Origin: Macrostomum lignano
Taxonomy: Eukaryota
Direction: 5' to 3'
DNA: 21,573 nt
Assembly: GCA_002269645.1 (NCBI GenBank)
Contig: NIVC01005204.1
Location: forward strand, 1-21,573
The position numbers were made by a program, and so were the translations under genes. The notes under the pieces are model-generated. The model saw only the letters and a program-made list of their open reading frames with translations, had not been told where the DNA came from and did not search any database. Shown one piece after another: positions 1 through 21,517 of this stretch. Within the stretch, counting starts at the first letter, position 1, and every line of letters begins with the position of its first letter.

Positions 1-2090
1 ATTAGGGGATGCTTGCTATCTGGGTGGATGCTTGCTAGGAGTATTAGGGATGCTTGCTATCTGGGTGGATGCTTGCTAGGAGTATTAGGGGATGCTTGCT
101 ATCTGGGTGGATGCTTGCTAGGAGTATTAGGGGATGCTTGCTATCTGGGTGGATGCTTTGCTAGGAGTATTAGGGATGCTTGCTATCTGGGTGGATGCTT
201 GCTAGGAGTATTAGGGGATGCTTGCTATCTGGGTGGATGCTTGCTAGGAGTATTAGGGGATGCTTGCTATCTGGGTGGATGCTTGCTAGGAGTATTAGGG
301 GATGCTTGCTATCTGGGTGGATGCTTGCTAGGAGTATTAGGGGATGCTTGCCTATCTGGGTGGATGCTTGCTAGGAGTATTAGGGGATGCTTGCTATCTG
401 GGTGGATGCTTGCTAGGAGTATTAGGGGATGCTTGCTATCTGGGTGGATGCTTGCTAGGAGTATTAGGGGATGCTTGCTATCTGGGTGGATGCTTGCTAG
501 GAGTATTAGGGGATGCTTGCTATCTGGGTGGATGCTTGCTAGGAGTATTAGGGGATGCTTGCTATCTGGGTGGATGCTTGCTAGGAGTATTAGGGGATGC
601 TTGCTATCTGGGTGGATGCTTGCTAGGAGTATTAGGGGATGCTTGCTATCTGGTGGATGCTTGCTAGGAGTATTTAGGGGATGCTTGCTATCTGGGTGGA
701 TGCTTGCTAGGAGTATTAGGGATGCTTGCTATCTGGGTGGATGCTTGCTAGGAGTATTAGGGGATGCTTGCTATCTGGTGGATGCTTGCTAGGAGTATTA
801 GGGGATGCTTGCTATCTGGGTGGATGCTTGCTAGGAGTATTAGGGGATGCTTGCTATCTGGGTGGATGCTTGCTAGGAGTATTAGGGGATGCTTGCTATC
901 TGGGTGGATGCTTGCTAGGAGTATTAGGGGATGCTTGCTATCTGGGTGGATGCTTGCTAGGAGTATTAGGGGATGCTTGCTATCTGGGTGGATGCTTGCT
1001 AGGAGTATTAGGGGATGCTTGCTATCTGGGTGGATGCTTGCTAGGAGTATTAGGGATGCTTGCTATCTGGGTGGATGCTTGCTAGGAGTATTAGGGGATG
1101 CTTGCTATCTGGGTGGATGCTTGCTAGGAGTATTAGGGGATGCTTGCTATCTGGGTGGATGCTTGCTAGGAGTATTAGGGGATGCTTGCTATCTGGGTGG
1201 ATGCTTGCTAGGAGTATTAGGGGATGCTTGCTATCTGGGTGGATGCTTGCTAGGAGTATTAGGGGATGCTTGCTATCTGGGTGGATGCTTGCTAGGAGTA
1301 TTAGGGGATGCTTGCTATCTGGGTGGATGCTTGCTAGGAGTATTAGGGGATGCTTGCTATCTGGGTGGATGCTTGCTAGGAGTATTAGGGGATGCTTGCT
1401 ATCTGGGTGGATGCTTGCTAGGAGTATTAGGGGATGCTTGCTATCTGGGTGGATGCTTGCTAGGAGTATTAGGGGATGCTTGCTATCTGGGTGGATGCTT
1501 GCTAGGAGTATTAGGGGATGCTTGCTATCTGGGTGGATGCTTGCTAGGAGTATTAGGGGATGCTTGCTATCTGGGTGGATGCTTGCTAGGAGTATTAGGG
1601 GATGCTTGCTATCTGGGTGGATGCTTGCTAGGAGTATTAGGGGATGCTTGCTATCTGGGTGGATGCTTGCTAGGAGTATTAGGGGATGCTTGCTATCTGG
1701 GTGGATGCTTGCTAGGAGTATTAGGGGATGCTTGCTATCTGGGTGGATGCTTGCTAGGAGTATTAGGGGATGCTTGCTATCTGGGTGGATGCTTGCTAGG
1801 AGTATTAGGGGATGCTTGCTATCTGGGTGGATGCTTGCTAGGAGTATTAGGGATGCTTGCTATCTGGGTGGATGCTTGCTAGGAGTATTAGGGGATGCTT
1901 GCTATCTGGGTGGATGCTTGCTAGGAGTATTAGGGGATGCTTGCTATCTGGGTGGATGCTTGCTAGGAGTATTAGGGGAGGCTTGCTATCTGGGTGGATG
2001 CTTGCTAGGAGTATTAGGGGATGCTTGCTATCTGGGTGGATGCTTGCTAGGAGTATTAGGGGTGCTTGCTACTGGGGGATGCTTGCTATC
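1..2090. repeat. 42-bp tandem satellite, ~50 copies, runs off the left edge
   Basis: Unit ATTAGGGGATGCTTGCTATCTGGGTGGATGCTTGCTAGGAGT repeated almost perfectly; the 14-aa periodicity of the overlapping ORFs agrees with 42 bp. Confidence 0.97.
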
Positions 2091-2944: not shown

Positions 2945-3300
2945 ATCCTAATACTAAAACTGGTGCGTTGTTTGTGTGTCTGTTCGATAACTCCTATTAT
3001 CTCTCTCTCTCTTCTCTCTTTCTCTCTCTCTCTCTCTCTTCTATCCTAATACTCTCTCTCTCTCTTCTATCTCCTAATGCTAAAACTGGTGCGTTGTTTG
3101 TGTGTATGTATGTTGTAAGTGAACTCCTAAAATACTGCCAAGTCAGCGTCGAAACTTATATGGGAAAAATTGCAAATTTTCCGGATCAGTCTTTAGGCTA
3201 TTTTAATTTTTAATTTTCACATTTTAATATCCCTAAAAAAGCAGAAAACTGCTTTTTAAACCCTCAATAACCTTCGTTGGCCACTCTGCCTGGGGCTGCA
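2529..3300 (+). mobile_element. Possible Helentron-associated (HINE/DINE-1-like) non-autonomous element with internal tandem amplification
   Basis: 5' TTGGCCACCCGAAGG (2533-2547, with a CCC-GAA-GGG mini-hairpin) has an imperfect inverted partner CCTTCGTTGGCCA (3271-3283). A TGTTTGTGTGTCTGTTCGATAACTCC block plus microsatellite follows. This layout resembles HINEs; the family call is by recollection and unverified. Confidence 0.35.
2567..3105. repeat. ~124-128 bp compound tandem repeat (unique block + (CT)n), 4 full units plus a partial
   Basis: CCTAATACTAAAACTGGTGCGTTGTTTGTGTGTCTGTTCGATAACTCCT starts at 2567, 2691, 2819 and 2947; a variant copy starts near 3073. Confidence 0.93.
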
Positions 3301-3319
3301 GCTGATAGCGTAGTCTGGC

Positions 3320-3829
3320 GGCCATTATTTCAGTGTGCCGGAAGCGGTCATTATTTCACACTTTTTTATCACGCTTTAATTGGCTGTTTTGAGAGAATTA
3401 TTTTACCCATAGACGACTGAGATACGTCTTAGTTTGACCATAGACAACACTGTGATGCGTGCTGATTTCGTTTGCGTCTTGCAAGAAATCAGGAAAGCGG
3501 GTAGTACGAGTGAAAGAAAGCTATTTGTCTTGTCAAACAACAACTATGGCTAGTGCATATCGTGAAACAGCACCGCTTATTAATTGGAAAAAATCTTCTT
3601 GTCGACGACTGAACGAACCGTGCGACCTATGCTTCAGTGGAGATGACACAGGAGATGCGGGTAAGTATAATATGTCAACATTGTAAGTAAATTAGTGGCT
3701 ATACTAATGAACATATAGAAACTGTGAATTTTTTACATTGTCCATTAATCTGCGGGTTGGATGGATTCGGAACGCGCAGTTCGCTTCTTCGAGAACTGCC
3801 ACTTCAAGGATTGCACGTTTCAGTTATAA
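3320..3829 (+). pseudogene. Crypton deletion derivative 1 (chimeric, non-coding remnant)
   Basis: ~3345-3625 is a direct repeat of ~4505-4778. It is followed by a phase-1 GTAAGT donor at 3661, a degenerate acceptor (CGG, 3753-3755) and an exon reading WMDSERAVRFFENCHFKDCTFQL* (stop 3827-3829), matching the C-terminal motif of the full-length YR. Confidence 0.7.
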
Positions 3830-4024
3830 TGAGCAACTTCTGATGAACAGTCTATGACTACCGTGTTGTTTTTGTGCTTAATGTGCGCGTTTTCCACTGT
3901 TTAGCAATTTGACGATCATTCGCGCTGGCGCGCTAATAACATTAACACTCGAAAATAGTGCAGAAGAATATATCATTATTCGCATTTTTATGCAGAACAA
4001 TACATGACTGCAAACAATGGTAGA

Positions 4025-4124
4025 TTGTATAGTATGCAACTGAGTTGAATAATGGCCAAAACTCGAGTGCGCGTAGCGCACGAGTGTCTATGGCCATTAT
4101 TCAACTCAGTTGCATACTATACAA
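4025..4124. repeat. Palindrome A: perfect 34-bp arms, 32-nt structured spacer
   Basis: TTGTATAGTATGCAACTGAGTTGAATAATGGCCA (4025-4058) is the exact reverse complement of 4091-4124; the spacer contains GTGCGC-GTA-GCGCAC. Confidence 0.95.
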
Positions 4125-4169
4125 GTGCATTGTATTTATACTTTCACTCAGCGCTCAGTCATTGTCCAG

Positions 4170-4294
4170 AAGACACAGCCTGGCGTAATGACAAACTCAA
4201 CTGGCCATTATTTCAGCTTTAACAGACGTTTGAACCATAGACGATTAGTTAAAGTATTCATATATTAACTGGCATAAGGGAATAATGTTCACAG
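4170..4294. repeat. ~125-bp inverted repeat, left arm (partner 8591-8713)
   Basis: ACAGCCTGGCGTAATGACAAACTCAACTGGCCATTATTTCAGCTTTA... matches the reverse complement of 8591-8713 with scattered mismatches. Confidence 0.9.
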
Positions 4295-4438
4295 TAATGA
4301 TAATCATAACAATAGTAATATTAGTGAGAAGAAAAATGATAGTCAAAACTATTTAGCCACAAAACTATTTAGCAGAAAACGCGCTACGCGCACTCGTGTT
4401 TGGCCATTATTTCAGCCCCTTACCTACTACGCAATCTA

Positions 4439-4526
4439 CCATTATTCCACACTTTTGCGGCCATTATTCCACACTTTTGCGGCCATTATTCCACACTTTT
4501 GTCGCTGTCATTATTCCATACTTTTT
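4439..4526 (+). repeat. 22-bp tandem boxes CCATTATTCCACACTTTTGCGG (candidate recombinase-binding sites)
   Basis: Copies at 4439, 4461 and 4483 and a variant at 4508. The same box occurs three times at 6211-6275 and inverted once at each right end (~5343-5362, ~8429-8448). Binding function is inferred. Confidence 0.75.
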
Positions 4527-5413
4527 ATCATGCTTCAATTGGCTGTTTTAAGAGTTGTTTTACCCATAGACGACTGAGTTATGTGGCTTAGTTTGACCAT
4601 AGACAACACTGTGATGAGTGCTGATTTTGCTTGCGTCTTGCAAGAAATCAGGAAAGCGAGTAGTGGGAGAAAAAGCTATTTGTCTTGTCAAACAACTATG
4701 GCTATAGTGCATCTCGTCAAACAGCCGCGCTTATTAATTGAAAAAATCTTCCTGTCGACGACTGAACGAACCGTGCGGCGCTACCTAGGAAGAAAACGCG
4801 ACCATGCAGTCTTCAACGCCTCGACGGCTATAAACGATGCCTGAAAGCGGCCAATCGATTCAGTCGAGCAGCCGCCAGTCCCAAAGAATCCCAGCTTGGA
4901 TACTGCGGTACCAAAGAGGCTCATCAGACGAAGCTCATCAGTCGCATGCCAACTTAACCAAGACGTGCATCTTTCAAATGGTAAGTTCGGCAACTATACT
5001 TGAGCACCTGTATTTCTCTTTCATAGAAAACATTCAAAATAGACCAACTCCTTTTGCAGTGCCAAATCATCAGGCTAAAGTGTCGAGCATCTTTGGGAAC
5101 TGCGGCTTTGAGAACTGCATGTTTCACTTTGGGTGACAAATTGATTTTTACATTGTCAAATTTCGACTACAAACTGATGAACTGCACTAGCTGTGACATT
5201 TATTATTAACCCTTTTCGTGTAGCTGGTACTTTAGTTTTAATGATTTTTCCTTTTTGTTCATTTACTTCTTGTTGTTCTGTATTTATTAACAAAAATACT
5301 GTGCGATGGATTTTTTCAATCCAAATGTCTATGGTACACATCAAAACTGTGGAATAATGGCCTAAATATTTTTTTCATTGCGTCTGGGTAAAAGTATAAT
5401 TACAATGTATGAT

Positions 5414-5511
5414 TATCAAGAGGTTAAGCTTCACATACAACTGCCATAGCGTCGAGGCCGGTAGGCCGAGACGCGGTAAGGCAGTTGTGTGTGAAGCGTG
5501 ACCTCTTGATA
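5414..5511. repeat. 98-bp hairpin element
   Basis: TATCAAGAGGT/ACCTCTTGATA and GCTTCACATACAACTGCC/GGCAGTTGTGTGTGAAGC arms; core GCGTC-GA-GGCC-GGTA-GGCC-GA-GACGC (5449-5474). Confidence 0.9.
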
Positions 5512-5516
5512 GTGGA

Positions 5517-5690
5517 ATTGTGTCTAGTTTCGTCCAAAAACCAATTCAAAACGGCTAGGACACAACTTCCCAGACGGGAATTGTTCACTAAGCGATTCTA
5601 GGGATTTGTGTCATAGGCATTTTCCACTTGGCGCAAGCCAGATGATGGCCATAGTGGCCCATTTGTGGCCCAAACGAAACTAGACACAAT
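5517..5690. mobile_element. MITE-like element with 17-bp perfect TIRs
   Basis: ATTGTGTCTAGTTTCGT (5517-5533) / ACGAAACTAGACACAAT (5674-5690); superfamily not assignable. Confidence 0.7.
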
Positions 5691-5884
5691 GGGCCGTATG
5701 CAGAAAGCTCTGTCTAGGGTAGTCCGGTCTTGAAAAGCCAGCCTGGACTTGGATTTGGTATGCAGAAACACAAAGTTAGACCGGTCTACTATAGACAGAA
5801 CAAGGGTAGCTAGACCATAGACTATAGACTGAACTACCCAAGTCTGGACTAGCTAGTCTGGACTAAGCTTTCTGCATACGGCCC
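5691..5884. mobile_element. MITE with GGGCCGTATGCAGAAAGCT TIRs and AT flanks (PIF/Harbinger-ISL2EU-like)
   Basis: Perfect 19-bp TIRs 5691-5709 / 5866-5884, with AT on both sides (5689-5690, 5885-5886). GG termini with an AT duplication fit ISL2EU-type elements (inference). Confidence 0.65.
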
Positions 5885-5984
5885 ATTGCATTGTTTAGCA
5901 ATTTGACGATCATTATTCGCATTTTTTATGCAGAACAATACATTACTACAAACAATGCATTGTTTTTAGGATCCTCAAACAGAA

Positions 5985-6065
5985 AAACAATGCAAAGAAT
6001 CAGCGGTCCCAGTGCGTGACAACGATTTGTCTATGGCTCGCGCCTACCGGCGCTCGCCAAACAAT
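5985..6065. repeat. Left half and core of split palindrome C (right arm at 8492-8534)
   Basis: AATCAGCGGTCCCAGTGCGTGACAACGATT matches the reverse complement of AATCGTTGCCACGCACTGGGACCGCTGATT (8489-8518) with one mismatch; hairpin core at 6035-6058. Confidence 0.85.
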
Positions 6066-6071
6066 GGTAAA

Positions 6072-6176
6072 TTGTATAGTATGCAACTGCACTGAGTTGA
6101 ATAATGGCCAAAACACGAGTGCGCGTAGCGCACGAGTGTCTATGGCCATTATTCAACGAAGTTGCATACTACACAA
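6072..6176. repeat. Palindrome B, second copy of palindrome A
   Basis: Same arms with small indels; core ACAC-GA-GTGCGC-GTA-GCGCAC-GA-GTGT. Confidence 0.92.
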
Positions 6177-6412
6177 GTGCATTGTATTTATACTTTCACT
6201 CAGCGCGCAGTCATTATTCCACACTTTTGCGGCCATTATTCCACACTTTTGTCGCGGTCATTATTCCACACTTTTCTCTTGACCATAGACTAAACGTTGC
6301 TCGCTATGTTGTCTTCAGAGGTTACCTGGACCATAGACAGAAAACTTGCAATATTGATGTCCATTTCTTATCACTCTTGACATATTAAGGGACGCTTTTT
6401 TGTAGCTTCAAA

Positions 6413-7945
6413 ATGCCTGCATTTATCAATTGGAAAAATATTCCGGTCGACTCGCTCAATGGTGTCAAGATGGACGAGCTGCAACTTTTGTCGGATACAA
6501 GCATGCATGGAGAACATCACGATGACCAGGCCCTGAGTGATTTCATTAAGTGGCTTGAGAACGATCATGGCACTGAAGAACTGCCCGAACTTCCGGAGGT
6601 GGCGGGCGACGACATGGACCTGAGTTCGAGAATGGATGGTGTAGAAATTCAGTCACTGCCAAAGTCAACGGTGGACCAGATGAATCGGCATGGGCAGGCT
6701 TTCGTGAAGTTTCTCTCTGAGACAACCAAGGAGTCGCCTGTGACGATGGAAGTGTGGAAGCTGAATGAGTACTTGCGCTATTATTATTTCGGTCTGCAGA
6801 GGACGAACGGTGAAAAGTATTCGCCGTCAAGTCTTGTGTGCATTAGAGCTGGGATACACCGGTACTTTAACCTAATTCTGAAGCGCTCTATCAACTTCAT
6901 TGACGGAGAAGAGTTTGCGAGCTCCAATCGCATGCTAAGAGTGAAGGTGAGGGAATTCCACAATGCTGGAGGCGTTACCAAGCAATTTGAAGCTATCGAG
7001 GACGCTGATCTAACAAAGTTGCGAGCATATTTCGACGGAAGTACCGCTGAGAAGTTGCAGGATGAGGTATTGTTCACCATTTTTTACGTTTTTGGAGAGC
7101 GTGGGCAAGAGCACCTGCCGGCATTGAAGGCAGCAAGCAGTCTGTTGACAAAGGTGGATGCTGATGGCAGACCCTATATGTCGCTTCCAATACTGCCTAC
7201 GAAGAATCAAATTTCCGATCCTACGCGTTGTAAGGACGACCGCCCGAAGCAAGCTAGGCTGTATGGGAAGCAGCGGGACCTGGTCAATAAAAACATTTCG
7301 CTGCTCCCATCGGATCGCAAGGACGACTGCTTGTTCTCAAGAGCACTACCGAATGACAAGATAACGGGTTGTTTGCGTTTTTTATCTCAGCAGGTACGAG
7401 GCATCAATTGGTTCACCTCATTGATGAAACGGCTTAGCAAGCAATGCAATCTATCTCGAGAGTATACAAATCATTGTATACGGGTGACGCGAATCGCGGA
7501 CTTGCACGAGACTGGCCATGGAATGAATGATATCATGTGCATCACCGGTCAGAAGAGCGAAAAAACGGTGCGCCGATATCTATCAAGGAAGCGCGACCGC
7601 GCAGTTTTTGAAGCGTCGACGGCTGTAAGCACGGCCTTAGATCGTCCTATCGAGGTGCCCAAGCAATCGAACGGCGTAAACATGCCATGCATTGAGACAG
7701 GTGTCGACGGTATCTCACCTGTCGAAGTCAAGCCGGCTAATGAAGTGCAAGTTTCAAGTGGTAAGTTTGAGTAACTAAATGAATGTCTATTTATCAGAAA
7801 ATGTTTGTTGGTGAATAAATGTTCCTTTGGTGTAAAAACAGTTTCGCTTTAAATTATTGCAGTGATGAACGCCCAGGCACAAGTGTCCCGTATTTTCGAA
7901 AATTGCCGCTTTGAAAACTGTACATTTAATTTTGGGGGTAAGTAA
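6413..7945 (+). CDS. Crypton tyrosine recombinase (DUF3504-like), join(6413..7760,7863..7945), ~476 aa
   Basis: GEKYSPSSLVCIRAGIHRY core-binding motif; R230 (FGERGQEH), K264 (PTKNQ), H354-x-x-R357 (NHCIR), Q380 (TGQKS) and Y389 (VRRY). A phase-1 GTAAGT...TTGCAG intron (7761-7862) adds VMNAQAQVSRIFENCRFENCTFNFGGK*. The unspliced ORF gives 453 aa. Confidence 0.9.
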
Positions 7946-8053
7946 TAGGCGTCTTTGACATCTGCAGTAACGTTGATAGACAGTGACATTTAATTGCTCC
8001 TGTTCTGGTTTTGTGTTCACGTTTATTTAATGCATGGATGAATGCAGCTTTTA

Positions 8054-8276
8054 CACCTTTTCACGTTCAATTTTGAACAAACTCCAGTTCTAAAAAAACT
8101 AGCGGAAATTCAATTCAGACGATTCAGACTGGGGACAATTTTGTCTATGGCTAAAACTTGCTTCGGTTGCATAATGTTTTGAACGGGGTTTGTTGCCCAA
8201 GTCTGAATTATCTGAATTGAATTTCCGCTAGTTTTTTTAGAACTGGACTTTGATCAAAATTGAACGTGAAAAGGTG
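8054..8276. mobile_element. Long-TIR MITE (~85-bp arms) with TA flanks, downstream of the YR stop
   Basis: CACCTTTTCACGTTCAATTTTGA...CTAGCGGAAATTCAATTCAGA is mirrored at ~8190-8276; TA at 8052-8053 and 8277-8278 suggests Tc1/mariner (inference). Confidence 0.7.
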
Positions 8277-8590
8277 TAGTACATGTTTTTCTTGTTTGAC
8301 ACAGTTTTGGCCATAGACTACTAGCCGTGAGGCCCTGATATCTTTTCATTTATACGAGTTCTCGTATTTGCATCCGTTGCTTATTGGTTAAAATATACTG
8401 ATTGACTCTTTTGTCTATGGAAAGTTCCAAAAGTGTGGAATAATGGCCTAAATTAAACTTCATTGCGTCTGAAGGAAAGTATATGTACAATCGTTGCCAC
8501 GCACTGGGACCGCTGATTATTTATCCATTGTTTGTTAGCTAAAATGTCTGGACTATCCTTTTTTCAGTGTATTCCAGAATTCCATGTAGA

Positions 8591-8713
8591 CTGTTTGCGA
8601 TTATTCCCTTATGTCAGTTAATAAATGCATAGTTAACTAATCGTCTATGGTTCAAACGCCTGCTAAAGCTGAAATAATGGCCAGTTGAGTTTGTCATTAC
8701 GCCAGGCTGTCTT
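8591..8713. repeat. ~125-bp inverted repeat, right arm (partner 4170-4294)
   Basis: Reverse complement of 4170-4294; contains GTCTATGG (8643) and GAAATAATGGCC. Confidence 0.9.
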
Positions 8714-8918
8714 AAGGATAATTTCAAAACCATATTCAAAACTCTCTCTTTTGCCTTTCGCTGTTTTTGTGCTGTTTCTGTTAAAATTTCAACAAAAATT
8801 ATTTGTTTGGCCGCCGAAAATTGCACGAACTTTTTCAATCCCGAAAAAACTAAAAGATAAATGCTATTAAAAAACGAGCAAAAATTAAAGAGAAAAAAGC
8901 AAATCTAATGATTGAAAC

Positions 8919-9623
8919 TTACTCAAATTCTGGCTCTTTCGGTGGTTTTTCCAAAGCAGATGAACTTTTAGTTACTTTTTTACTCCAACAACAACAACAA
9001 AGTACACTGGAGTTTTGACTCCCAATATACTCAGAATTGGCGTCATCTTGTTGTGCATTGGTGAGTAGGTTCACAATTTTGTGGTGACCATTCTGTGATG
9101 CAATGTTGAGAGGTGAACAGCCATGAACATTTTCTTGAAGATTGACGTCAGCTTCTGCTTTGATGAGTGAGCTCACAACTTGGTGGTGACCATTCTGTGA
9201 TGCAATGTAGAGAGGTGAGCAGCCATCGACTTCTTGAAGATTGACGTCAGCTTGTGCTTTGATGAGTGAGCTCACAACTTGGTGGTGACCCTTCGCTGAT
9301 GCAATGTAGAGAGGTGAGCAGCCATCGCTTCGTTGAAGATTGACGTCAGCTCTGGCTTGAATGAACATTTCGATAATTTTGACTTTTCCCATTTCACATG
9401 CAATGTGAAGCGATGAGAATGTCATCTCATTGATACTGAAGAGCCTATCAACGTTAGAAGCCATCTGCAGGTATCGTGAAATTTTAGTTTCATTTTCGAG
9501 CATAATGGCTTCCAGTATCTCCTGCTCAGTGCCATCGAGGCCCTCGCTTTGGCTTGCGGACCTGCCGAAGTTCTGCATCAGAACTGCTGCAATCGCTGTC
9601 AGAATTCTCCAAAGAGCTTCCAT
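8919..9623 (-). CDS. Intronless ankyrin-repeat protein, 234 aa, 4 ANK repeats
   Basis: LHIACEMG, SPLYIASAKGH, SPLYIASQNGH and SPLNIASQNGH repeats with ADVN linkers; hydrophobic N-terminus; C-terminal CCCCW. Confidence 0.85.
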   Translation of the reverse strand: MEALWRILTAIAAVLMQNFGRSASQSEGLDGTEQEILEAIMLENETKISRYLQMASNVDRLFSINEMTFSSLHIACEMGKVKIIEMFIQARADVNLQRSDGCSPLYIASAKGHHQVVSSLIKAQADVNLQEVDGCSPLYIASQNGHHQVVSSLIKAEADVNLQENVHGCSPLNIASQNGHHKIVNLLTNAQQDDANSEYIGSQNSSVLCCCCWSKKVTKSSSALEKPPKEPEFE

Positions 9624-12145: not shown

Positions 12146-15801
<3,656 letters not shown>

Positions 15802-16263
15802 ATCTCATCATCATCATCATCATCATCATCCATCTATCACATCATCATCATAGAAAGCTCCCTAGCGCAAAACTACTTTCAAATTTATATCCACAACAAA
15901 AATTTTTGTGAAAAATCTGTATTTATGCATTAATCATATATTATATTTTCACAGAAACACAATATTACAAGCTAAGATAAGCTGACATGAAGCTAACAAT
16001 GTATATTTTTTTAATATATACGAACTTTGCATGTATGTAATAATGGTTCGATTATAACATTTCTACTAATGATACTATTAAAAGTACACAATAATGCTAA
16101 GAATCATGTACAAGACTAAACTGATACAACTGACACAGACATTATATTTTTAAAATAAATTCATTAAAAGTTTTTTTGATTAAAAGTTACTATTTAGGAG
16201 TTATTTACCCTCCACTAATTAGTGGAGTCTGAAGGACAACACTGGGGCGCGTTAACAATATTT

Positions 16264-16665: not shown

Positions 16666-16983
16666 TTATAACAAGTTACCATTTCAAGTTACCAATGTTA
16701 CAGTATTTGAACACTGGGCGCTGAAAAGACAGACACGGAAAAGTTTGCAGAAATTTTAGTGCACATCAATACTATAGCAATTCTAATACTAGGCCTGGAT
16801 TAACAATTATCAAATCTGTTCATACTTCAGTAATAAACATTCTAGAGACAAACACGACTAAGCGCAAAACAAGCAATAAATATTTTGTGACTAAACAACC
16901 CGCCGAGGACCTCTAAGATCTGGACTGAAAATAAAAGTAGTCTAGTAGTATAAAAGATACTAAATAGTCTAGTATCTGCTAAA

Positions 16984-17044
<61 letters not shown>

Positions 17045-17045
17045 G

Positions 17046-17082
<37 letters not shown>

Positions 17083-17103
17083 ATAACTAACTAACTAACT
17101 AAA

Positions 17104-17172
<69 letters not shown>

Positions 17173-17173
17173 G

Positions 17174-17255
<82 letters not shown>

Positions 17256-17256
17256 G

Positions 17257-17300
<44 letters not shown>

Positions 17301-17301
17301 G

Positions 17302-17338
<37 letters not shown>

Positions 17339-17339
17339 A

Positions 17340-17408
<69 letters not shown>

Positions 17409-17409
17409 G

Positions 17410-17451
<42 letters not shown>

Positions 17452-17452
17452 G

Positions 17453-17494
<42 letters not shown>
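16984..17494. repeat. (TAAC)n microsatellite, ~128 units
   Basis: Direct reading; occasional TGAC, TAAA and CGAA variants. Confidence 0.98.
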
Positions 17495-17649
17495 ACTAAA
17501 CTAAGCTAAAAAACTTACTACCTAATTAGAAAACTAACTATACCAATAACTTTTGACCATTTTCAATCCAAGTCTTCTAAGGTCCTTGAACACAGACTCT
17601 CAAACCGACGCAGCTTTCCGTTCCCAATCCCTTCTGTCAAGCGACTCCG

Positions 17650-18675
17650 TCAGTCGCGGTGGCTTCTGGACAGAGCGGTCATCTGGTACTCCTCAGTCGG
17701 CAGGAACGGATCGTCCAGAGTCTCGCTGATGCCCACCTCAGCGACACCGGCCAGGGAGAGTCCGCTTGGACCGGCGCCGCCGCTGCCACCGCCACAGCCG
17801 CCTTCTCCACCGCTGATGCCGAAGCCTCTGACAACTCGGCTGGCTCCGCTGCTTCTCTCTGTGGCTCTCGAAATTTCGTTGCGACCTCCGCGACCGACGC
17901 TGCCAACGCCACCGCCTCGGCGACCGCCGCCGCCATAAGCGGCGCCGTTTCTACCGACGCCCGCGCCTCTCCCTCCAGCGCCTCCGCCGCCTCCGCCTCC
18001 GCCGCCAACGCCAGCTGCAGCGCGACAAGCTGTCGGAAGGGCGGCGCCGGCTGTTCGACGAAAATTGCGGCTCAGACAGACGAAGATCAAAAAGTTGCAG
18101 GCGGTGTCCAGCGACACCAGCGTGTCGTTGAAGCTGAAGAACCAGTCGGCGGTGGTGAACTGCTGCCAGTCGAACATCAGCATCACGGCTCCTGGCGCTT
18201 CGAACACGCAGAAGGTCACCGCCAGGCAGAGCACGATCGCCGTTGCTATGCGAGTGTTCCGACGCTGATTCTGAGCCATGTCGCTTCCGGCTGGCGTTGG
18301 AAGCAGCTGGTTCTGCTGTTGCTGTTGCTGCTGATGCTGCTGCTGCTGCTGCAGGAGAAACGGTCTGTAGGTAGCGTAGAGAAAAGCAGCCATCACAATG
18401 GAACTGATCAACACCACTGGTATGGGTATGCCGGACTGGAATATCCGGGACATTCTCAGCAGCTCCTGGAACCGGGATCTCGGATAGGCGATGAACAGGA
18501 CGCAGAAGGTGAGCGAGATGAGCAGCACCAGGTTGAAGACGGCCAGCTGGGCGCACCTGGTCAGACGGTTGCGCACTGCGATGGGGCTCAGGGTGGCCAA
18601 GGTGCGGAACAGAGTCACGCAGGTGGTCCACTGGTTGCGCTGCAGCATGGCCGCGTTCGCGAATGCGTATAGGAT
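17650..18675 (-). CDS. Terminal exon (TM3-TM7 and C-tail) of a class A GPCR, FMRFamide/sex-peptide-receptor/Srw-like
   Basis: QWTTCVTLFRTLATLSP (TM3), GIPIPVVL (TM5), LCLAVTFCVFEAP (TM6), LDTACNFLIFVCLSRNFRR (TM7/H8). An acceptor CCCTGCAG on the minus strand at 18676-18683 extends the frame by 9 codons (ILYAFANAA). TM1-2 exons were not found in the window. Confidence 0.82.
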   Translation of the reverse strand: MLYAFANAAMLQRNQWTTCVTLFRTLATLSPIAVRNRLTRCAQLAVFNLVLLISLTFCVLFIAYPRSRFQELLRMSRIFQSGIPIPVVLISSIVMAAFLYATYRPFLLQQQQQHQQQQQQQNQLLPTPAGSDMAQNQRRNTRIATAIVLCLAVTFCVFEAPGAVMLMFDWQQFTTADWFFSFNDTLVSLDTACNFLIFVCLSRNFRRTAGAALPTACRAAAGVGGGGGGGGGAGGRGAGVGRNGAAYGGGGRRGGGVGSVGRGGRNEISRATERSSGASRVVRGFGISGGEGGCGGGSGGAGPSGLSLAGVAEVGISETLDDPFLPTEEYQMTALSRSHRD

Positions 18676-18720: not shown

Positions 18721-19512
18721 TAAGGTCATTTGGCTTGGATTCTCAAGGTCATTTGGTTTGGATTCTCCAAAGTCATCTGGTTTGGATTCCCCAAGGTCAT
18801 TTGGTTTGGATTCTCCAAAGTTTGGTTTGGATTCTCCAAAGTCATTTGGTTTGGATTCCCCAAGGTCATTTGGTTTGGATTCTCCAAAGTCATTTAGTTT
18901 GGATTCCCCAAGGTCATTTGGTTTTGATTCTCCAAAGTCATTTAGTTTGGATTCCCCAAGGTCATTTGGTTTGGATTCTACAAGGTCGCACAGTTTATAT
19001 TCTTCAAGGTCATTTGGTTTGGATTCCCTAAGTTCACTTGTTTTGGATTTACCACGGTCTCTAAGGATACTGAGTTTAGATTCTCCAAGGTAAGTTACTC
19101 GTAGTTTTGGATTCCTTAAGCACTTTGGTTTGGTTTGGATTCCCCAGGTCATTTGATTTGGATTCCCCAAGGTCATTTGGTTTGGATTCCCCAGGTCATT
19201 TGGTTTGGATTCCCCAAGGTCATTTGGTTTGGATTACTTAAGGTTATTTGGTTTGGATTCCCCAAGGTCATTTGGTTTGGATTCCCCAAGGTCATTTGGT
19301 TTTGATTGGGTTTAAGGTCATTTGGTTTGGATTGGATTGGATTATTGGATTATTTATTGGATTAAATTGGATTATTTACTTAAGGCGATTTGGTTTGGAT
19401 TTCCCAAGGTTGTTCGGTTTAGATTCCCCAAAGCCATTTGGTTTGGATTTCCCAAGGTTATTTTGTTTGGATTCCCCAAGGGCACTTGGGCCGGAATTTC
19501 CCCTGGGTCATT
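18721..19512. repeat. 24-bp minisatellite CCAAGGTCATTTGGTTTGGATTCC, interrupted and decaying
   Basis: Direct reading; lies in the predicted GPCR intron. Confidence 0.93.
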
Positions 19513-20175: not shown

Positions 20176-20804
20176 ATGAGAGCCACATGCAGCCGGTAGA
20201 CGGAGTTTGCCAGCCGCAGCTCCAGGGCATACTAAATGTGCCGGAAAGTCGAGTTGTAGCATCTGGGTGCTTGACAGACAGACAGAACGAGTCTTCCAAT
20301 GTAAAAAGTCAATGCTCCTCAGACAGAAAAGCTGGGACTCAGAAAGGAAAAGCCATAGATGTGCTTGCAGAGATTGTCTTTCAGAAGCAGCAATGACCGG
20401 CAAAGCTGCACTTTAACATTGAGTTATTAATGGTTTTGAAAGCAGCGAAGCCATAAGCTATGGTCGCGACATTGACTGCCCTCAGTGGCAGCCCTAAGAA
20501 AGTCTGCCCTCATGGCATTCTCATATGGCCTCCGCATGAGTTCCTAATCAAATGCTTCGGTCAACAAAGTATGAGAAACATTTTCCATTGGAAGTCTGCC
20601 GCCATATTTTACATGAAATTTAACTGTGCCCGAAAATGCGAACTCGGGATTGCAGCACGGGTGCTCGAGTGTGACATGAGCTGCGGGCCTGCAGAGTGCA
20701 TTTCTATCGTGATTTAAAGTCTGCTTTAACCAGTGGGCGCGAAATCTGGGATTTTGGATAGGAGAGATGGATGAAACTGAAAAAAGGCAGGGAGAGATCG
20801 CACA

Positions 20805-21517
<713 letters not shown>

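What the first reader, a model, noticed from the sequence alone, without database searches (positions are those of the whole stretch)
5414..6176. Three unrelated palindromes share one strand-specific DNA hairpin fold
Seen: GCGTC-GA-GGCC-GGTA-GGCC-GA-GACGC (5449-5474, +); GGC-GA-GCGCC-GGTA-GGCGC-GA-GCC (6035-6058, -); ACAC-GA-GTGCGC-GTA-GCGCAC-GA-GTGT (~6113-6139, +, with a variant at 4061-4085). Stem sequences differ, but every GA lies in C-GA-G opposite C-GA-G, loops are G(G)TA, and a CCATAG/CTATGG lies beside each core. Known: tandem GA in a pyrimidine-GA-purine context forms stable sheared pairs; GNA loops give unusually stable DNA hairpins; integron attC and CTXphi attP are folded-ssDNA substrates of tyrosine recombinases. 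The opposite strand gives weak TC/TC mismatches. Inference: structure-defined, one-strand recombination or recognition sites for a eukaryotic YR, a mechanism I do not know to be described for Cryptons.
Basis: partly seen in the sequence, partly recalled or inferred. Interest (0 to 1): 0.82.

Follow-up and report, generated by a model that had tools for sequence, protein, structure and literature searches.

The report
Conserved DNA hairpin in Crypton transposons
The three small palindromes are real copies of one strand-specific DNA hairpin (a GC-clamped G..A loop plus a tandem G-A mismatch) that caps a 100-220 bp palindrome near the end of tyrosine-recombinase 'Crypton' transposons from flatworm to sea urchin and sea star, which suggests a folded-DNA recombination site that I could not find described for any eukaryotic transposon.

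Summary
All three hairpins and the variant sit at the stated coordinates: 3 in the window against 0.018 expected in shuffles.

The window holds a tandem or nested cluster (about 3305-8710) of CryptonA-type tyrosine-recombinase (YR) elements. One copy is intact (YR gene 6413-7945, one intron) and two are deleted.

The same motif recurs in about 30 independent related loci. These include Macrostomum lignano, three echinoderm genomes and ocean metagenomes. The motif is: stem, GA, a 2-6 bp GC-rich stem, a GNA or GNYA loop closed by C-G, stem, GA, stem. It always forms the tip of a 96-220 bp imperfect palindrome.

- **Covariation:** stems covary while the GA/GA pair stays fixed.
- **Spacing:** the two GA dinucleotides lie 9-18 nt apart in duplex form but are always opposite when folded.
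- **Strand bias:** further GA/GA loops lie on the same strand (12 against 1), and single mismatches are mostly purine-purine.
- **Orientation:** it is fixed within clades.
- **Location:** in one family with four different flanks, the palindrome is the element terminus.
- **Breakpoints:** in the window, homology breakpoints fall at ACAATG/CATTGT motifs that bracket the palindromes.

Best reading (about 0.55): this is a folded hairpin or cruciform recombination and recognition site for the Crypton YR, analogous to integron attC. YR binding, cleavage and a single-stranded state are inferred, not shown. I found no description of it in the searchable literature.

The parts
5449..5474 (+). P1 core hairpin: GCGTC-GA-GGCC-GGTA-GGCC-GA-GACGC
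   Evidence: weak CM hit at 5445-5478
5414..5511 (.). 98-bp imperfect palindrome whose tip is P1. It is bracketed by ACAATG (5402-5407) and AATTGT (5516-5521).
6034..6059 (-). P2 core hairpin, with the GA strand on the minus strand: TGGC-GA-GCGCC-GGTA-GGCGC-GA-GCCA
5958..6066 (.). 109-bp insert, relative to the deleted unit B, that carries P2. It is flanked by the 9-bp direct repeat CAAACAATG (5949-5957 and 6058-6066).
6113..6139 (+). P3 core hairpin: ACAC-GA-GTGCGC-GTA-GCGCAC-GA-GTGT. It lies 274 nt upstream of the YR start codon.
   Evidence: CM 45.1 bits, E 6e-11
6072..6176 (.). 105-bp imperfect palindrome whose tip is P3. It is bracketed by ACAATG (6061-6066) and CATTGT (6180-6185).
4061..4085 (+). 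P3' core hairpin, a copy of P3 belonging to the deleted unit B
   Evidence: CM 41.5 bits at 4056-4092
4025..4124 (.). 100-bp palindrome whose tip is P3' (34-nt perfect arms). It is bracketed by ACAATG (4014-4019) and CATTGT (4128-4133).
4372..4404 (-). Truncated, inverted copy of the P3 hairpin
   Evidence: (I10, I11)
6413..7760 (+). Tyrosine recombinase gene, exon 1. It carries the catalytic residues R150, K264, H354-x-x-R357 and Y389.
7863..7945 (+). Tyrosine recombinase gene, exon 2, encoding the conserved C-terminal F-x-N-C-x-F-x-x-C-x-F motif. The intron is 7761-7862.
6207..6275 (+). Three 22-25 bp iterons, GCGGCCATTATTCCACACTTTT. Further copies lie at 4435-4525 and 3344-3365, and inverted copies at 8428-8448 and 5342-5362.
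3896..5150 (+). Unit B, a deletion derivative of the element that lacks most of the YR ORF but keeps the C-terminal exon. Its homology with unit C starts at CACTGT/CATTGT (3896 / 5889).
3305..3895 (+). Unit A, a second deletion derivative. The left end of the cluster carries GGCCATTATTTCAG, the inverted repeat of 8660-8710.
8600..8710 (.). Right end of the cluster. An inverted copy of it lies inside the cluster at 4175-4286.
   Evidence: (I2, I8)

Best explanation
The hairpins are copies and variants of a conserved cis-acting element of CryptonA-type transposons. The element is a long imperfect palindrome (about 100-220 bp) at or near one terminus.

**Anatomy.**
- The tip is a DNA mini-hairpin, GC-G(N)NA-GC.
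- Two to six base pairs below the tip lies a tandem G.A/A.G internal loop (a 'CGAG block').
- In many lineages further GA/GA loops follow on the same strand.

**Proposed function.**
- The element is selected to fold within one strand. It acts either as a hairpin on the GA strand or as a cruciform with two unequal arms.
- It is the recognition and recombination site of the element's own Cre/Xer/IntI-like tyrosine recombinase.
- The structure, not the sequence, identifies the site. The GA/GA loops tell the two strands, and so the orientation, apart.
- Strand exchange takes place at a short core in or next to the base of the stem. ACAATG is the best candidate in the window lineage. In a marine lineage the junction is GCTAT|TATTAACC, inside the extended stem.
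- Integration of circles into resident sites would give the tandem and nested arrays seen here.

**Shown:** the motif, its conservation and covariation, its strand bias, its terminal position and the breakpoints.

**Inferred:** folding in vivo, YR binding and cleavage, and ssDNA versus cruciform.
For: 1. **Not chance.** The window has 3 hairpins against 0.018 expected. Across 83 loci plus the window there are 20 GA/GA-type hairpins against 2.0 in shuffles, maximum 7. Among all 2x2 internal-loop hairpins of at least 8 bp in the 83 loci, GA/GA (15 records) and TC/TC (11) dominate, while every other type has 4 or fewer.
2. **Unbiased survey.** Among palindromes of >=40 bp near Crypton YR genes, the tip carries GA/GA plus a G..A loop in these loci:
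   - L001 (Macrostomum lignano)
   - L084 (Diadema setosum)
   - L085 (S. purpuratus)
   - L086 (Patiria miniata)
   - the TARA family L088-L095
   - L004, L005, L013, L014 (twice), L015, L017, L020, L026, L032, L046, L055 (twice), L057, L068 and L073
3. **Covariation.** Outer pairs 2-6 use all four Watson-Crick types, and the bases flanking GA covary as pairs, for example T-GA-A/T-GA-A, G-GA-G/C-GA-C and C-GA-A/T-GA-G. On the CM alignment, 92.7% of cells are paired against 64.2% when shuffled. 13 of 15 pairs show double changes. The covariation score is 0.70 against 0.19 (0 of 500 shuffles reach it), and slid controls reach at most 0.114.
4. **Geometry.** The two GA dinucleotides are 9-18 nt apart in duplex form, so they have no fixed helical phase, but they are always opposite when folded.
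5. **Strand bias.** With orientation set by the central loop, non-central 2x2 loops are GA/GA 12 against TC/TC 1 (p = 0.003). Single mismatches are purine-purine 15 against pyrimidine-pyrimidine 3 (p = 0.008).
6. **DNA-type loops.** Triloops are GAA, GTA, GCA and GGA. Tetraloops are GTTA, GGTA, GTCA, GCTA and GATA. None is GNRA, and the closing pair is C-G in 17 of 19. GCGNAGC and GCGNNAGC are the experimentally characterised, extraordinarily stable DNA mini-hairpins (PMC13037366). d(CGAG) blocks form sheared G:A pairs by NMR (PMC10085684).
7. **Fixed orientation, no flip/flop.** In all loci of the near clade the GA strand is the coding strand, 170-430 nt upstream of the YR. In nearly all of the far clade it is on the opposite strand, 80-1300 nt downstream.
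8. **Terminal position.** In the TARA family four different left flanks meet the element at TAT|TATTAACC. The right end in L088 is the edge of the 143-bp palindrome. The left-terminal 30 bp is the inverted repeat of the sequence just before the palindrome, so joining the ends lengthens the stem.
9. **Breakpoints.** Three homology breakpoints in the window lie at ACAATG/CATTGT. One of them is a 109-bp insert carrying P2, flanked by the direct repeat CAAACAATG. ACAATG occurs 17 times against 5.1 +/- 2.1 expected. In L014 two tandem units whose YR genes are about 65% identical share a 91% identical palindrome, and that homology ends right after CATTGTA.
10. **The enzyme.** The YR is a two-domain Cre-like enzyme with the catalytic residues intact.
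Against: - There is no experimental evidence that the YR binds or cleaves this structure, or that any Crypton passes through a single-stranded stage. The accepted but untested model is a double-stranded circle (PMC13565253).
- Many related YR loci with enough flank show no such hairpin (for example L025, L027, L038-L040, L060, L087). Some show degenerate or fully paired versions (L069, L075/76), and some show a different tip (L018, L021, L046). The motif is therefore not universal, or those copies are dead.
- The crossover core is not settled. ACAATG is absent from several lineages. The ends of the window cluster carry GGCCATTATT rather than a hairpin. The two right junctions of the TARA family disagree by 41 nt.
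- Generic DNA nearest-neighbour energies favour the GA strand by only 0-6 kcal/mol, and not in every case.
- The CM alignment used for the covariation counts was fitted to the structure, and the hairpins were found by their palindromy.
Confidence: 0.55

Rival explanations
1. This is a conventional duplex recombination site. The palindrome is a pair of inverted YR-binding arms read as B-DNA. The GA/TC asymmetries and the odd central loop only give the site a direction, as the loxP or FRT spacer does. No folding is involved.
For: The YR fold is Cre-like. Canonical YR sites are inverted repeats around an asymmetric core (PMC3212892). The breakpoints at a short core and the short terminal direct repeats fit the classical Crypton model.
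Against: - The arms differ completely between lineages, and between P1/P2 and P3 inside one cluster, while pairing is kept.
- The GA-to-GA distance varies from 9 to 18 nt, so there is no fixed helical phase.
- Any asymmetry would give direction, yet it is nearly always GA opposite GA, repeated on the same strand, with purine-purine single mismatches.
- The bases flanking GA covary as pairs, so CGAG is not a duplex recognition word.
- The tip is the specific DNA mini-hairpin consensus.
- Arms of 50-110 bp are far longer than YR binding arms.
Confidence: 0.15
2. This is a replication or priming signal, or a hairpin telomere. One version has the mini-hairpin-tipped stem acting as a complementary-strand priming signal on a single-stranded circular intermediate, like the phage G4 origin or ssiA. 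The other has it as the duplex copy of a terminal hairpin of a linear form, like parvovirus or poxvirus ends or a protelomerase site.
For: GCGNAGC mini-hairpins occur in ssDNA phage origins, in ssi signals and in N4 hairpin promoters (PMC13037366). The palindrome is terminal. Iterons lie next to it.
Against: - Orientation is fixed within clades and among the TARA copies, so there is none of the flip/flop expected from hairpin-end replication.
- The elements encode no Rep, primase or polymerase, only a YR.
- No viral relatives were found.
- Homology breakpoints and direct repeats point to recombination at the site.
- A priming role would not exclude the main explanation.
Confidence: 0.1
3. This is an RNA-level element: a structured 5' UTR or a hairpin-RNA/small-RNA precursor transcribed from the GA strand. 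Tandem sheared G.A pairs and G..A loops are common RNA motifs.
For: In the near clade the GA strand is the coding strand, 170-430 nt upstream of the start codon. Several short contigs that may be transcript assemblies begin just before it.
Against: - In the far clade, which includes three echinoderm genomes and DNA metagenomes, the GA strand is antisense to the YR gene and downstream of it.
- No tetraloop is GNRA and all are GNYA. The mini-hairpin is markedly more stable as DNA than as RNA.
- Rfam finds nothing.
- A 50-110 bp perfect-ish stem in a 5' UTR would block translation.
Confidence: 0.07
4. This is a binding site for a host factor or a promoter element, or a neutral by-product of palindrome maintenance, with no role in transposition chemistry.
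For: A CGAG-rich hairpin has been proposed as a regulatory element in a human promoter (PMC10085684). In the near clade the site lies where a promoter would be.
Against: Position and strand relative to the gene differ between clades. The palindrome is conserved at element termini and at tandem junctions. In L014 it is better conserved than the YR gene itself. GA/GA at a fixed distance from the tip in lineages sharing under 30% YR identity cannot be neutral.
Confidence: 0.05

Closest known systems
Integron attC sites (IntI tyrosine recombinase; PMC5027507, PMC3053210)
   Same: Both are imperfect palindromes whose sequence varies freely while the fold and a few unpaired features are conserved. 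The unpaired features choose the strand and the orientation. The distal part of the hairpin varies in length. Both are recognised by a YR, and the crossover lies near the base of the stem. After integration almost the whole site sits at one end of the unit. Head-to-tail arrays carry one site per unit.
   Different: The host is eukaryotic, and each unit carries its own YR. The marks are stacked tandem G.A pairs and a mini-hairpin tip, not extrahelical bases and an unpaired central spacer. Stems are longer (50-110 bp). The R-box consensus GTTRRRY is absent. Single-strand recombination and replicative resolution are not shown here.
CTX-phi attP(+) forked hairpin used by XerCD
   Same: A folded single strand of an inverted repeat creates the YR substrate, and mismatches in the stem control the reaction.
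   Different: CTX is an ssDNA phage with a known single-stranded stage and uses host recombinases. No ssDNA stage is known for Cryptons.
Crypton transposons, CryptonA group (Goodwin et al. 2003; Kojima & Jurka 2011, PMC3212892)
   Same: There is a single YR ORF with a DUF3504/QRICH1-like fold and no reverse transcriptase. Unit size is about 2-2.5 kb. Deleted non-autonomous derivatives occur, and a short core is shared at junctions. The published CryptonS terminus TATGG resembles the window motif CTATGG.
   Different: The literature reports no terminal repeats or structures for animal Cryptons ('n.d.'). Here there is a conserved terminal or subterminal palindrome with a defined hairpin tip, plus iterons and short inverted ends.
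DNA mini-hairpin GCGNAGC/GCGNNAGC and the CGAG block (PMC13037366; PMC10085684; PMC3201870)
   Same: The tips read GCGTAGC, GCGAAGC, GCGTTAGC and CCGGTAGG. The internal loops read C-GA-G opposite C-GA-G. These are exactly the sequences shown by NMR and melting to form sheared G.A pairs.
   Different: Those are biophysical motifs, or motifs of phage origins and a human promoter. They have not been linked to a transposon or a tyrosine recombinase.
IS200/IS605 end hairpins and Helitron 3' hairpins
   Same: These are subterminal imperfect hairpins read on one strand by the transposase.
   Different: Those elements use HUH (Y1/Y2) nucleases and rolling-circle or peel-and-paste ssDNA transposition. 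No HUH protein is encoded here.

Membership tests
Crypton (CryptonA) transposon | Encodes a tyrosine recombinase with the catalytic R..K..HxxR..Y residues as its only protein | tested here: met
   R150, K264, H354, R357 and Y389 are invariant in alignment A1. The predicted fold is Cre-like (E 2.5e-9). No other ORF lies in the unit.
Crypton (CryptonA) transposon | YR related to DUF3504/QRICH1-type animal Crypton YRs, with no reverse transcriptase | tested here: met
   Homologs carry PF12012, PF25561 and PF00589. The window protein itself falls below the Pfam thresholds.
Crypton (CryptonA) transposon | No long terminal repeats; short direct repeats at junctions; unit of about 2 kb | tested here: inconclusive
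   Unit spacing is about 2.05 kb in the window and 2.09 kb in L014, and the TARA element is about 2.56 kb. Short shared cores (CAAACAATG, TAT) sit at junctions. However, short inverted ends and a terminal palindrome are present, which the family description does not include.
Integron attC-like folded recombination site | Imperfect palindrome with a conserved fold, variable sequence and conserved unpaired features on one strand | tested here: met
Integron attC-like folded recombination site | R''/R' core with GTTRRRY, extrahelical bases, and an IntI-type integrase | tested here: not met
   There is no GTTRRRY consensus. The unpaired features are tandem G.A pairs. The YR matches Cre better than IntI4 (TM 0.5 against 0.37).
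Integron attC-like folded recombination site | Recombination of one folded strand, with resolution by replication | not testable with these tools
   This needs biochemistry or genetics.
DNA mini-hairpin (GCGNAGC / GCGNNAGC) | A C-G closed G(N)NA loop on a G-C stem | tested here: met
   The closing pair is C-G in 17 of 19. All loops run G..A. The definition is from PMC13037366.
CGAG block (tandem sheared G.A) | 5'-C-GA-G-3' opposite 5'-C-GA-G-3' within a stem | tested here: met
   This holds for all four window copies. Among relatives the outer pair is C-G in 15 of 18 and the inner pair G-C in 14 of 19. The NMR basis is PMC10085684. Actual pairing geometry was not measured here.
Hairpin telomere / protelomerase or parvovirus-type terminal palindrome | Both orientations (flip and flop) of the asymmetric tip among copies | tested here: not met
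   Orientation is fixed within clades and among the TARA copies.
IS200/IS605 or Helitron end hairpin | An HUH nuclease encoded by the element | tested here: not met
   Only a YR is encoded.
Known structured RNA family | A match to an Rfam covariance model | tested here: not met
   There are no matches at E <= 1 in window 3000-9000.

The most novel reading that the evidence does not exclude
Animal Cryptons transpose through a folded single strand. The YR recognises the GA-strand hairpin (mini-hairpin tip plus CGAG blocks), exchanges only that strand at the base of the stem, and replication resolves the product. This would be an integron/CTX-like ssDNA recombination pathway in eukaryotes, and the hairpin would be the long-missing Crypton 'end'.
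Probability: 0.3. Interest if true: 0.9.

Novelty: new variant of a known kind. Interest (0 to 1): 0.8.

Why it matters
The Crypton transposition mechanism has never been shown experimentally. Animal Cryptons are described as having no recognisable ends (PMC3212892; PMC13565253).

A conserved, structure-defined terminal element gives a concrete cis-site to test. It also gives a signature for annotating Cryptons and their non-autonomous derivatives.

If the YR reads the folded strand, this would be the first eukaryotic counterpart of integron attC or CTX attP recombination. It would also give two well-characterised DNA motifs, the GCGNAGC mini-hairpin and the CGAG block, a natural role in a transposon.

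A eukaryotic YR with a structure-specific site could be of practical interest for genome engineering.

Tried and rejected
- **MAFFT alignment.** A MAFFT alignment of all core hairpins misaligned the copies with short inner stems.
- **Covariance model.** A model built from 8 seeds finds P3, P3' and several relatives. It scores P1 only at E 1.8 and misses P2 and the short-inner-stem clade, so it is too seed-specific to serve as a family model. I relied on my own scans instead.
- **Exact look-ups.** The exact look-up of the window YR found nothing. The contigs of the closest homologs (L002, L003) are too short to reach the hairpin.
- **Negative searches.** Viral contigs hold no relative. Rfam gives nothing. 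The oyster locus L087 shows no such hairpin.
- **Rejected readings.**
  - Chance is excluded by the shuffles.
  - A duplex CGAG-word reading is excluded because the flanks covary as pairs.
  - A flip/flop telomere is excluded by the fixed orientation.
  - An mRNA structure is unlikely given the antisense position in the far clade and the absence of GNRA loops.
- **Not resolved.**
  - The full history of the nested cluster at 3305-8710.
  - The exact crossover nucleotide.
  - The 41-nt difference between the two TARA right junctions.
Full report
**1. What is in the window**

Region 3305-8710 is a cluster of related mobile-element copies set between satellite and microsatellite DNA and ordinary host genes.

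The ORF at 6413-7774 continues across a 102-nt intron (7761-7862) into a short exon (7863-7945). This gives a 476-aa protein whose C-terminus carries the F-x-N-C-x-F-x-x-C-x-F motif of its homologs.

- Its nearest relatives are 'Tyr recombinase domain-containing' proteins of the flatworm Macrostomum lignano, at 52% identity.
- More distant relatives carry the Pfam families DUF3504, QRICH1 and Phage_integrase. These are the hallmarks of animal (CryptonA) Cryptons (PMC3212892).
- The catalytic residues R..K..HxxR..Y are invariant in a 24-sequence alignment.
- An AlphaFold model (mean pLDDT 77.7) matches Cre best (E 2.5e-9). IntI4, XerH, XerA and the Tn1549 integrase follow.

Two upstream units, A (3305-3895) and B (3896-5150), are deletion derivatives that keep the C-terminal exon.

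Three motifs are confined to or enriched in the cluster:
- CCATAGAC occurs 16 times.
- GGCCATTATT occurs 13 times, partly inside 22-bp iterons.
- ACAATG occurs 17 times against 5.1 +/- 2.1 expected.

**2. The observation**

P1 (5449-5474, +), P2 (6035-6058, -), P3 (6113-6139, +) and the variant (4061-4085, +) read exactly as described. A truncated inverted copy lies at about 4372-4404.

Three such hairpins are found where 0.018 are expected.

- Each of P1, P3 and P3' is the tip of a roughly 100-bp imperfect palindrome.
- P1 and P2 share GCCGGTAGGC and differ by a compensatory swap, so they are related.
- P3 has a different stem.
- CCATAG/CTATGG is adjacent to each core, but in three different arrangements.

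**3. Relatives**

The M. lignano locus L001 carries CAGTCAC-GA-GTGGC-GAA-GCCAC-GA-GTGACTG 325 nt upstream of its YR gene. It lies at the centre of a 104-bp palindrome whose arms hold GTCTATGG/CCATAGAC.

A scan of JGI metagenome contigs with the YR alignment gave 80 more loci.

- Among all hairpins of at least 8 bp with a 2x2 internal loop in these loci, GA/GA gave 15 records and its complement TC/TC gave 11. No other mismatch type gave more than 4.
- With the window added, 20 GA/GA-type hairpins compare with 2.0 in shuffles.

An unbiased list of palindromes of >=40 bp, which does not look at mismatch type, shows the same tip in loci from deeply separated YR lineages. The tip is also present in four further sources:
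- the sea urchin Diadema setosum
- the sea urchin Strongylocentrotus purpuratus
- the sea star Patiria miniata
- a family from TARA ocean DNA metagenomes

Variants exist:
- a GTA/GTA 3x3 loop (L008)
- a single bulged A (L009, L012)
- GA/AA or GA/CA (L019, L069)
- a fully paired version (L075/76)

Many loci, including an oyster locus, show no such hairpin.

**4. Anatomy of the motif**

- The outer stem is long, and the whole palindrome spans 96-220 bp.
- The inner stem is 2-6 bp and 87% G+C.
- The loop is GAA, GTA, GCA, GGA, GTTA, GGTA, GTCA, GCTA or GATA. It is closed by C-G in 17 of 19 cases.
- The tip consensus is therefore GC-G(N)NA-GC. This is the 'mini-hairpin DNA' whose extraordinary stability, greater as DNA than as RNA, has been measured (PMC13037366; PMC3201870).
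- C-GA-G opposite C-GA-G is the 'CGAG block', which NMR shows to form sheared G:A pairs in DNA hairpins (PMC10085684).
- In many lineages further GA/GA loops follow down the stem. In the far clade they come about 21 or 29 nt apart, with a CCC-GA-G consensus. L005, L020 and L057 have three or more.
- A second recurrent loop type, 5'-GC opposite 5'-AA, appears in four lineages.

**5. Evidence that intrastrand pairing on one strand is what is selected**

(a) Stems covary. All four Watson-Crick types occur at outer positions 2-6, and the bases next to GA change together as pairs. On the model-fitted alignment:
- 92.7% of cells pair, against 64.2% after shuffling.
- 13 of 15 pairs show double changes.
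- The covariation score is 0.70 against 0.19, reached by 0 of 500 shuffles. Slid controls reach 0.114 or less.

The caveat is that this alignment was fitted to the structure.

(b) The two GA dinucleotides are 9-18 nt apart in the duplex. A protein reading B-DNA would meet them in changing helical phase. In the fold they always face each other.

(c) With the strand fixed by the central loop alone, the other 2x2 loops are GA/GA 12 times and TC/TC once. Single mismatches are purine-purine 15 times and pyrimidine-pyrimidine 3 times.

(d) No tetraloop is GNRA, and all have a pyrimidine at the third position. This fits DNA rather than RNA selection.

(e) Orientation relative to the YR gene is fixed within clades but opposite between them. 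It is on the coding strand and upstream in the window's clade. It is on the other strand and downstream in the echinoderm and marine clade. This argues against both an mRNA element and a flip/flop hairpin end.

**6. Link to recombination**

*TARA family.* Four different left flanks meet the element at TAT|TATTAACCGTATCAGACATCT.
- In L088 the right end is the edge of the 143-bp palindrome (..CAATATTGCTAT|flank).
- The left-terminal 30 bp is the inverted repeat of the sequence just before the palindrome.
- Joining the two ends therefore extends the stem, and the junction lies inside one arm, about 70 nt from the tip.
- A second right junction (L090) extends the arm by 41 nt and is unexplained.

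*Window.* Three homology breakpoints coincide with ACAATG/CATTGT:
- The start of B/C homology lies at 3896 / 5889.
- The end of homology lies at 5402-5407 / 8487-8491.
- A 109-bp insert carrying P2 is flanked by the direct repeat CAAACAATG.

The P1, P3 and P3' palindromes are each bracketed by ACAATG ... (C/A)ATTGT.

*L014.* Two tandem units whose YR genes are only about 65% identical share a 91% identical palindrome, and that homology ends right after CATTGTA.

ACAATG is not present in all lineages, so the core probably differs between them. The GGCCATTATT and CTATGG motifs remain alternative candidates in the window. Published CryptonS elements end in TATGG.

**7. Interpretation**

The most economical reading is that the palindrome is the Crypton's recombination site and that its folded form is what the YR recognises. 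The folded form could be a hairpin on the GA strand or a cruciform with unequal arms. The GA/GA loops and the mini-hairpin tip would then mark strand and orientation.

This works like integron attC (PMC5027507, PMC3053210). That site also has a variable sequence, a conserved fold, unpaired marks that choose the strand, a variable distal part and a crossover near the base. After integration almost the whole site sits at one end, and arrays carry one site per unit.

It is not a member of that family. The R-box consensus, the extrahelical bases and the IntI-type enzyme are all absent.

What is shown is sequence anatomy, conservation, covariation, strand bias, terminal position and breakpoints. 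Folding in vivo, YR binding and cleavage, and the choice between ssDNA and cruciform are inference. The rivals are a duplex-only site, a priming signal or hairpin end, an RNA element and a host-factor site. They are weighed in the Rival explanations section.

**8. Novelty**

The 2011 survey of Cryptons reports no terminal repeats in animal Cryptons and lists their termini as 'n.d.'.

A September 2026 review states that the Crypton mechanism has not been demonstrated and assumes a double-stranded circle.

Full-text searches pairing Crypton with hairpin, palindrome, stem-loop or termini found no description of this element.

Subscription journals and Repbase notes could not be searched, so prior mention cannot be excluded.

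Noticed in passing
window 12146-15838: This is a 3.7-kb (CTAT)n microsatellite of about 925 copies. It lies 3.4 kb from a Crypton cluster whose own recurrent motif is (GT)CTATGG. It may be coincidence.
   Followed up: no
window 6207-6275, 4435-4525, 3344-3365; inverted at 8428-8448 and 5342-5362: The 22-bp iterons GCGGCCATTATTCCACACTTTT flank the palindrome and the gene. Locus L005 has iterons AAAAGTGTTCATGCAA(C/T)G in a comparable layout (1-41, inverted at 1697-1779), and these share AAAAGTGT with the window iterons.
   Followed up: partly
window 5952-5963: The sequence ACAATGCATTGT joins, with no palindrome between them, the two half-sites that bracket the P1, P3 and P3' palindromes. It may be an 'empty' or joint form of the site.
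   Followed up: no
window 8052-8278: This is a large inverted repeat (83-nt arms, 94% complementary, 61-nt spacer) downstream of the YR gene. The spacer (8142-8173) is a diverged copy of the right arm of the P3 palindrome, starting at TGTCTATGG, with no GA/GA tip.
   Followed up: partly
window 3305-3333 and 8660-8710; 4175-4286: The two ends of the cluster are inverted repeats around GGCCATTATTTCAG. A 112-bp inverted copy of the right end, 94% identical, sits inside the cluster. The nesting history was not resolved.
   Followed up: partly
L004, L014, L032, L057 (long palindromes): A second recurrent 2x2 internal loop, 5'-GC opposite 5'-AA (for example CGCG/CAAG), occurs on the GA strand in four independent lineages.
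   Followed up: no
L085 (S. purpuratus) and L086 (Patiria miniata), just outside the palindromes: Sea-urchin and sea-star elements share GTTTTATA...GATCCTTGT(T/C)ATTTGAT next to their palindromes. This is either conserved terminal sequence across echinoderm classes or horizontal transfer.
   Followed up: no
L018 13-72, L021 2609-2668, L046 812-987: Some related YR loci carry a different palindrome tip, ACAC-GGGC-GTGT, with no GA/GA. L046 has both kinds.
   Followed up: no
L090 2627-2667 versus L088 2749 onward: Two copies of the TARA Crypton family differ at the right junction. In L090 the right arm of the palindrome runs 41 nt further, mirroring L088 2566-2605, before the flank begins.
   Followed up: partly
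window 1-2088, 16979-17540, 18722-19489, 20804-21517; 8919-9623 (-); 17650-18648 (-): The surroundings hold a 42-bp satellite (50 copies), (CTAA)n, 24/48-bp repeats and (ACAG)n. They also hold an ankyrin-repeat ORF and a weak Srw-type 7TM receptor ORF.
   Followed up: no
window 5520-5890: Nested inverted repeats (5521-5534/5674-5687 and 5687-5722/5853-5888) lie between P1 and unit C. They may be a separate small insertion.
   Followed up: no
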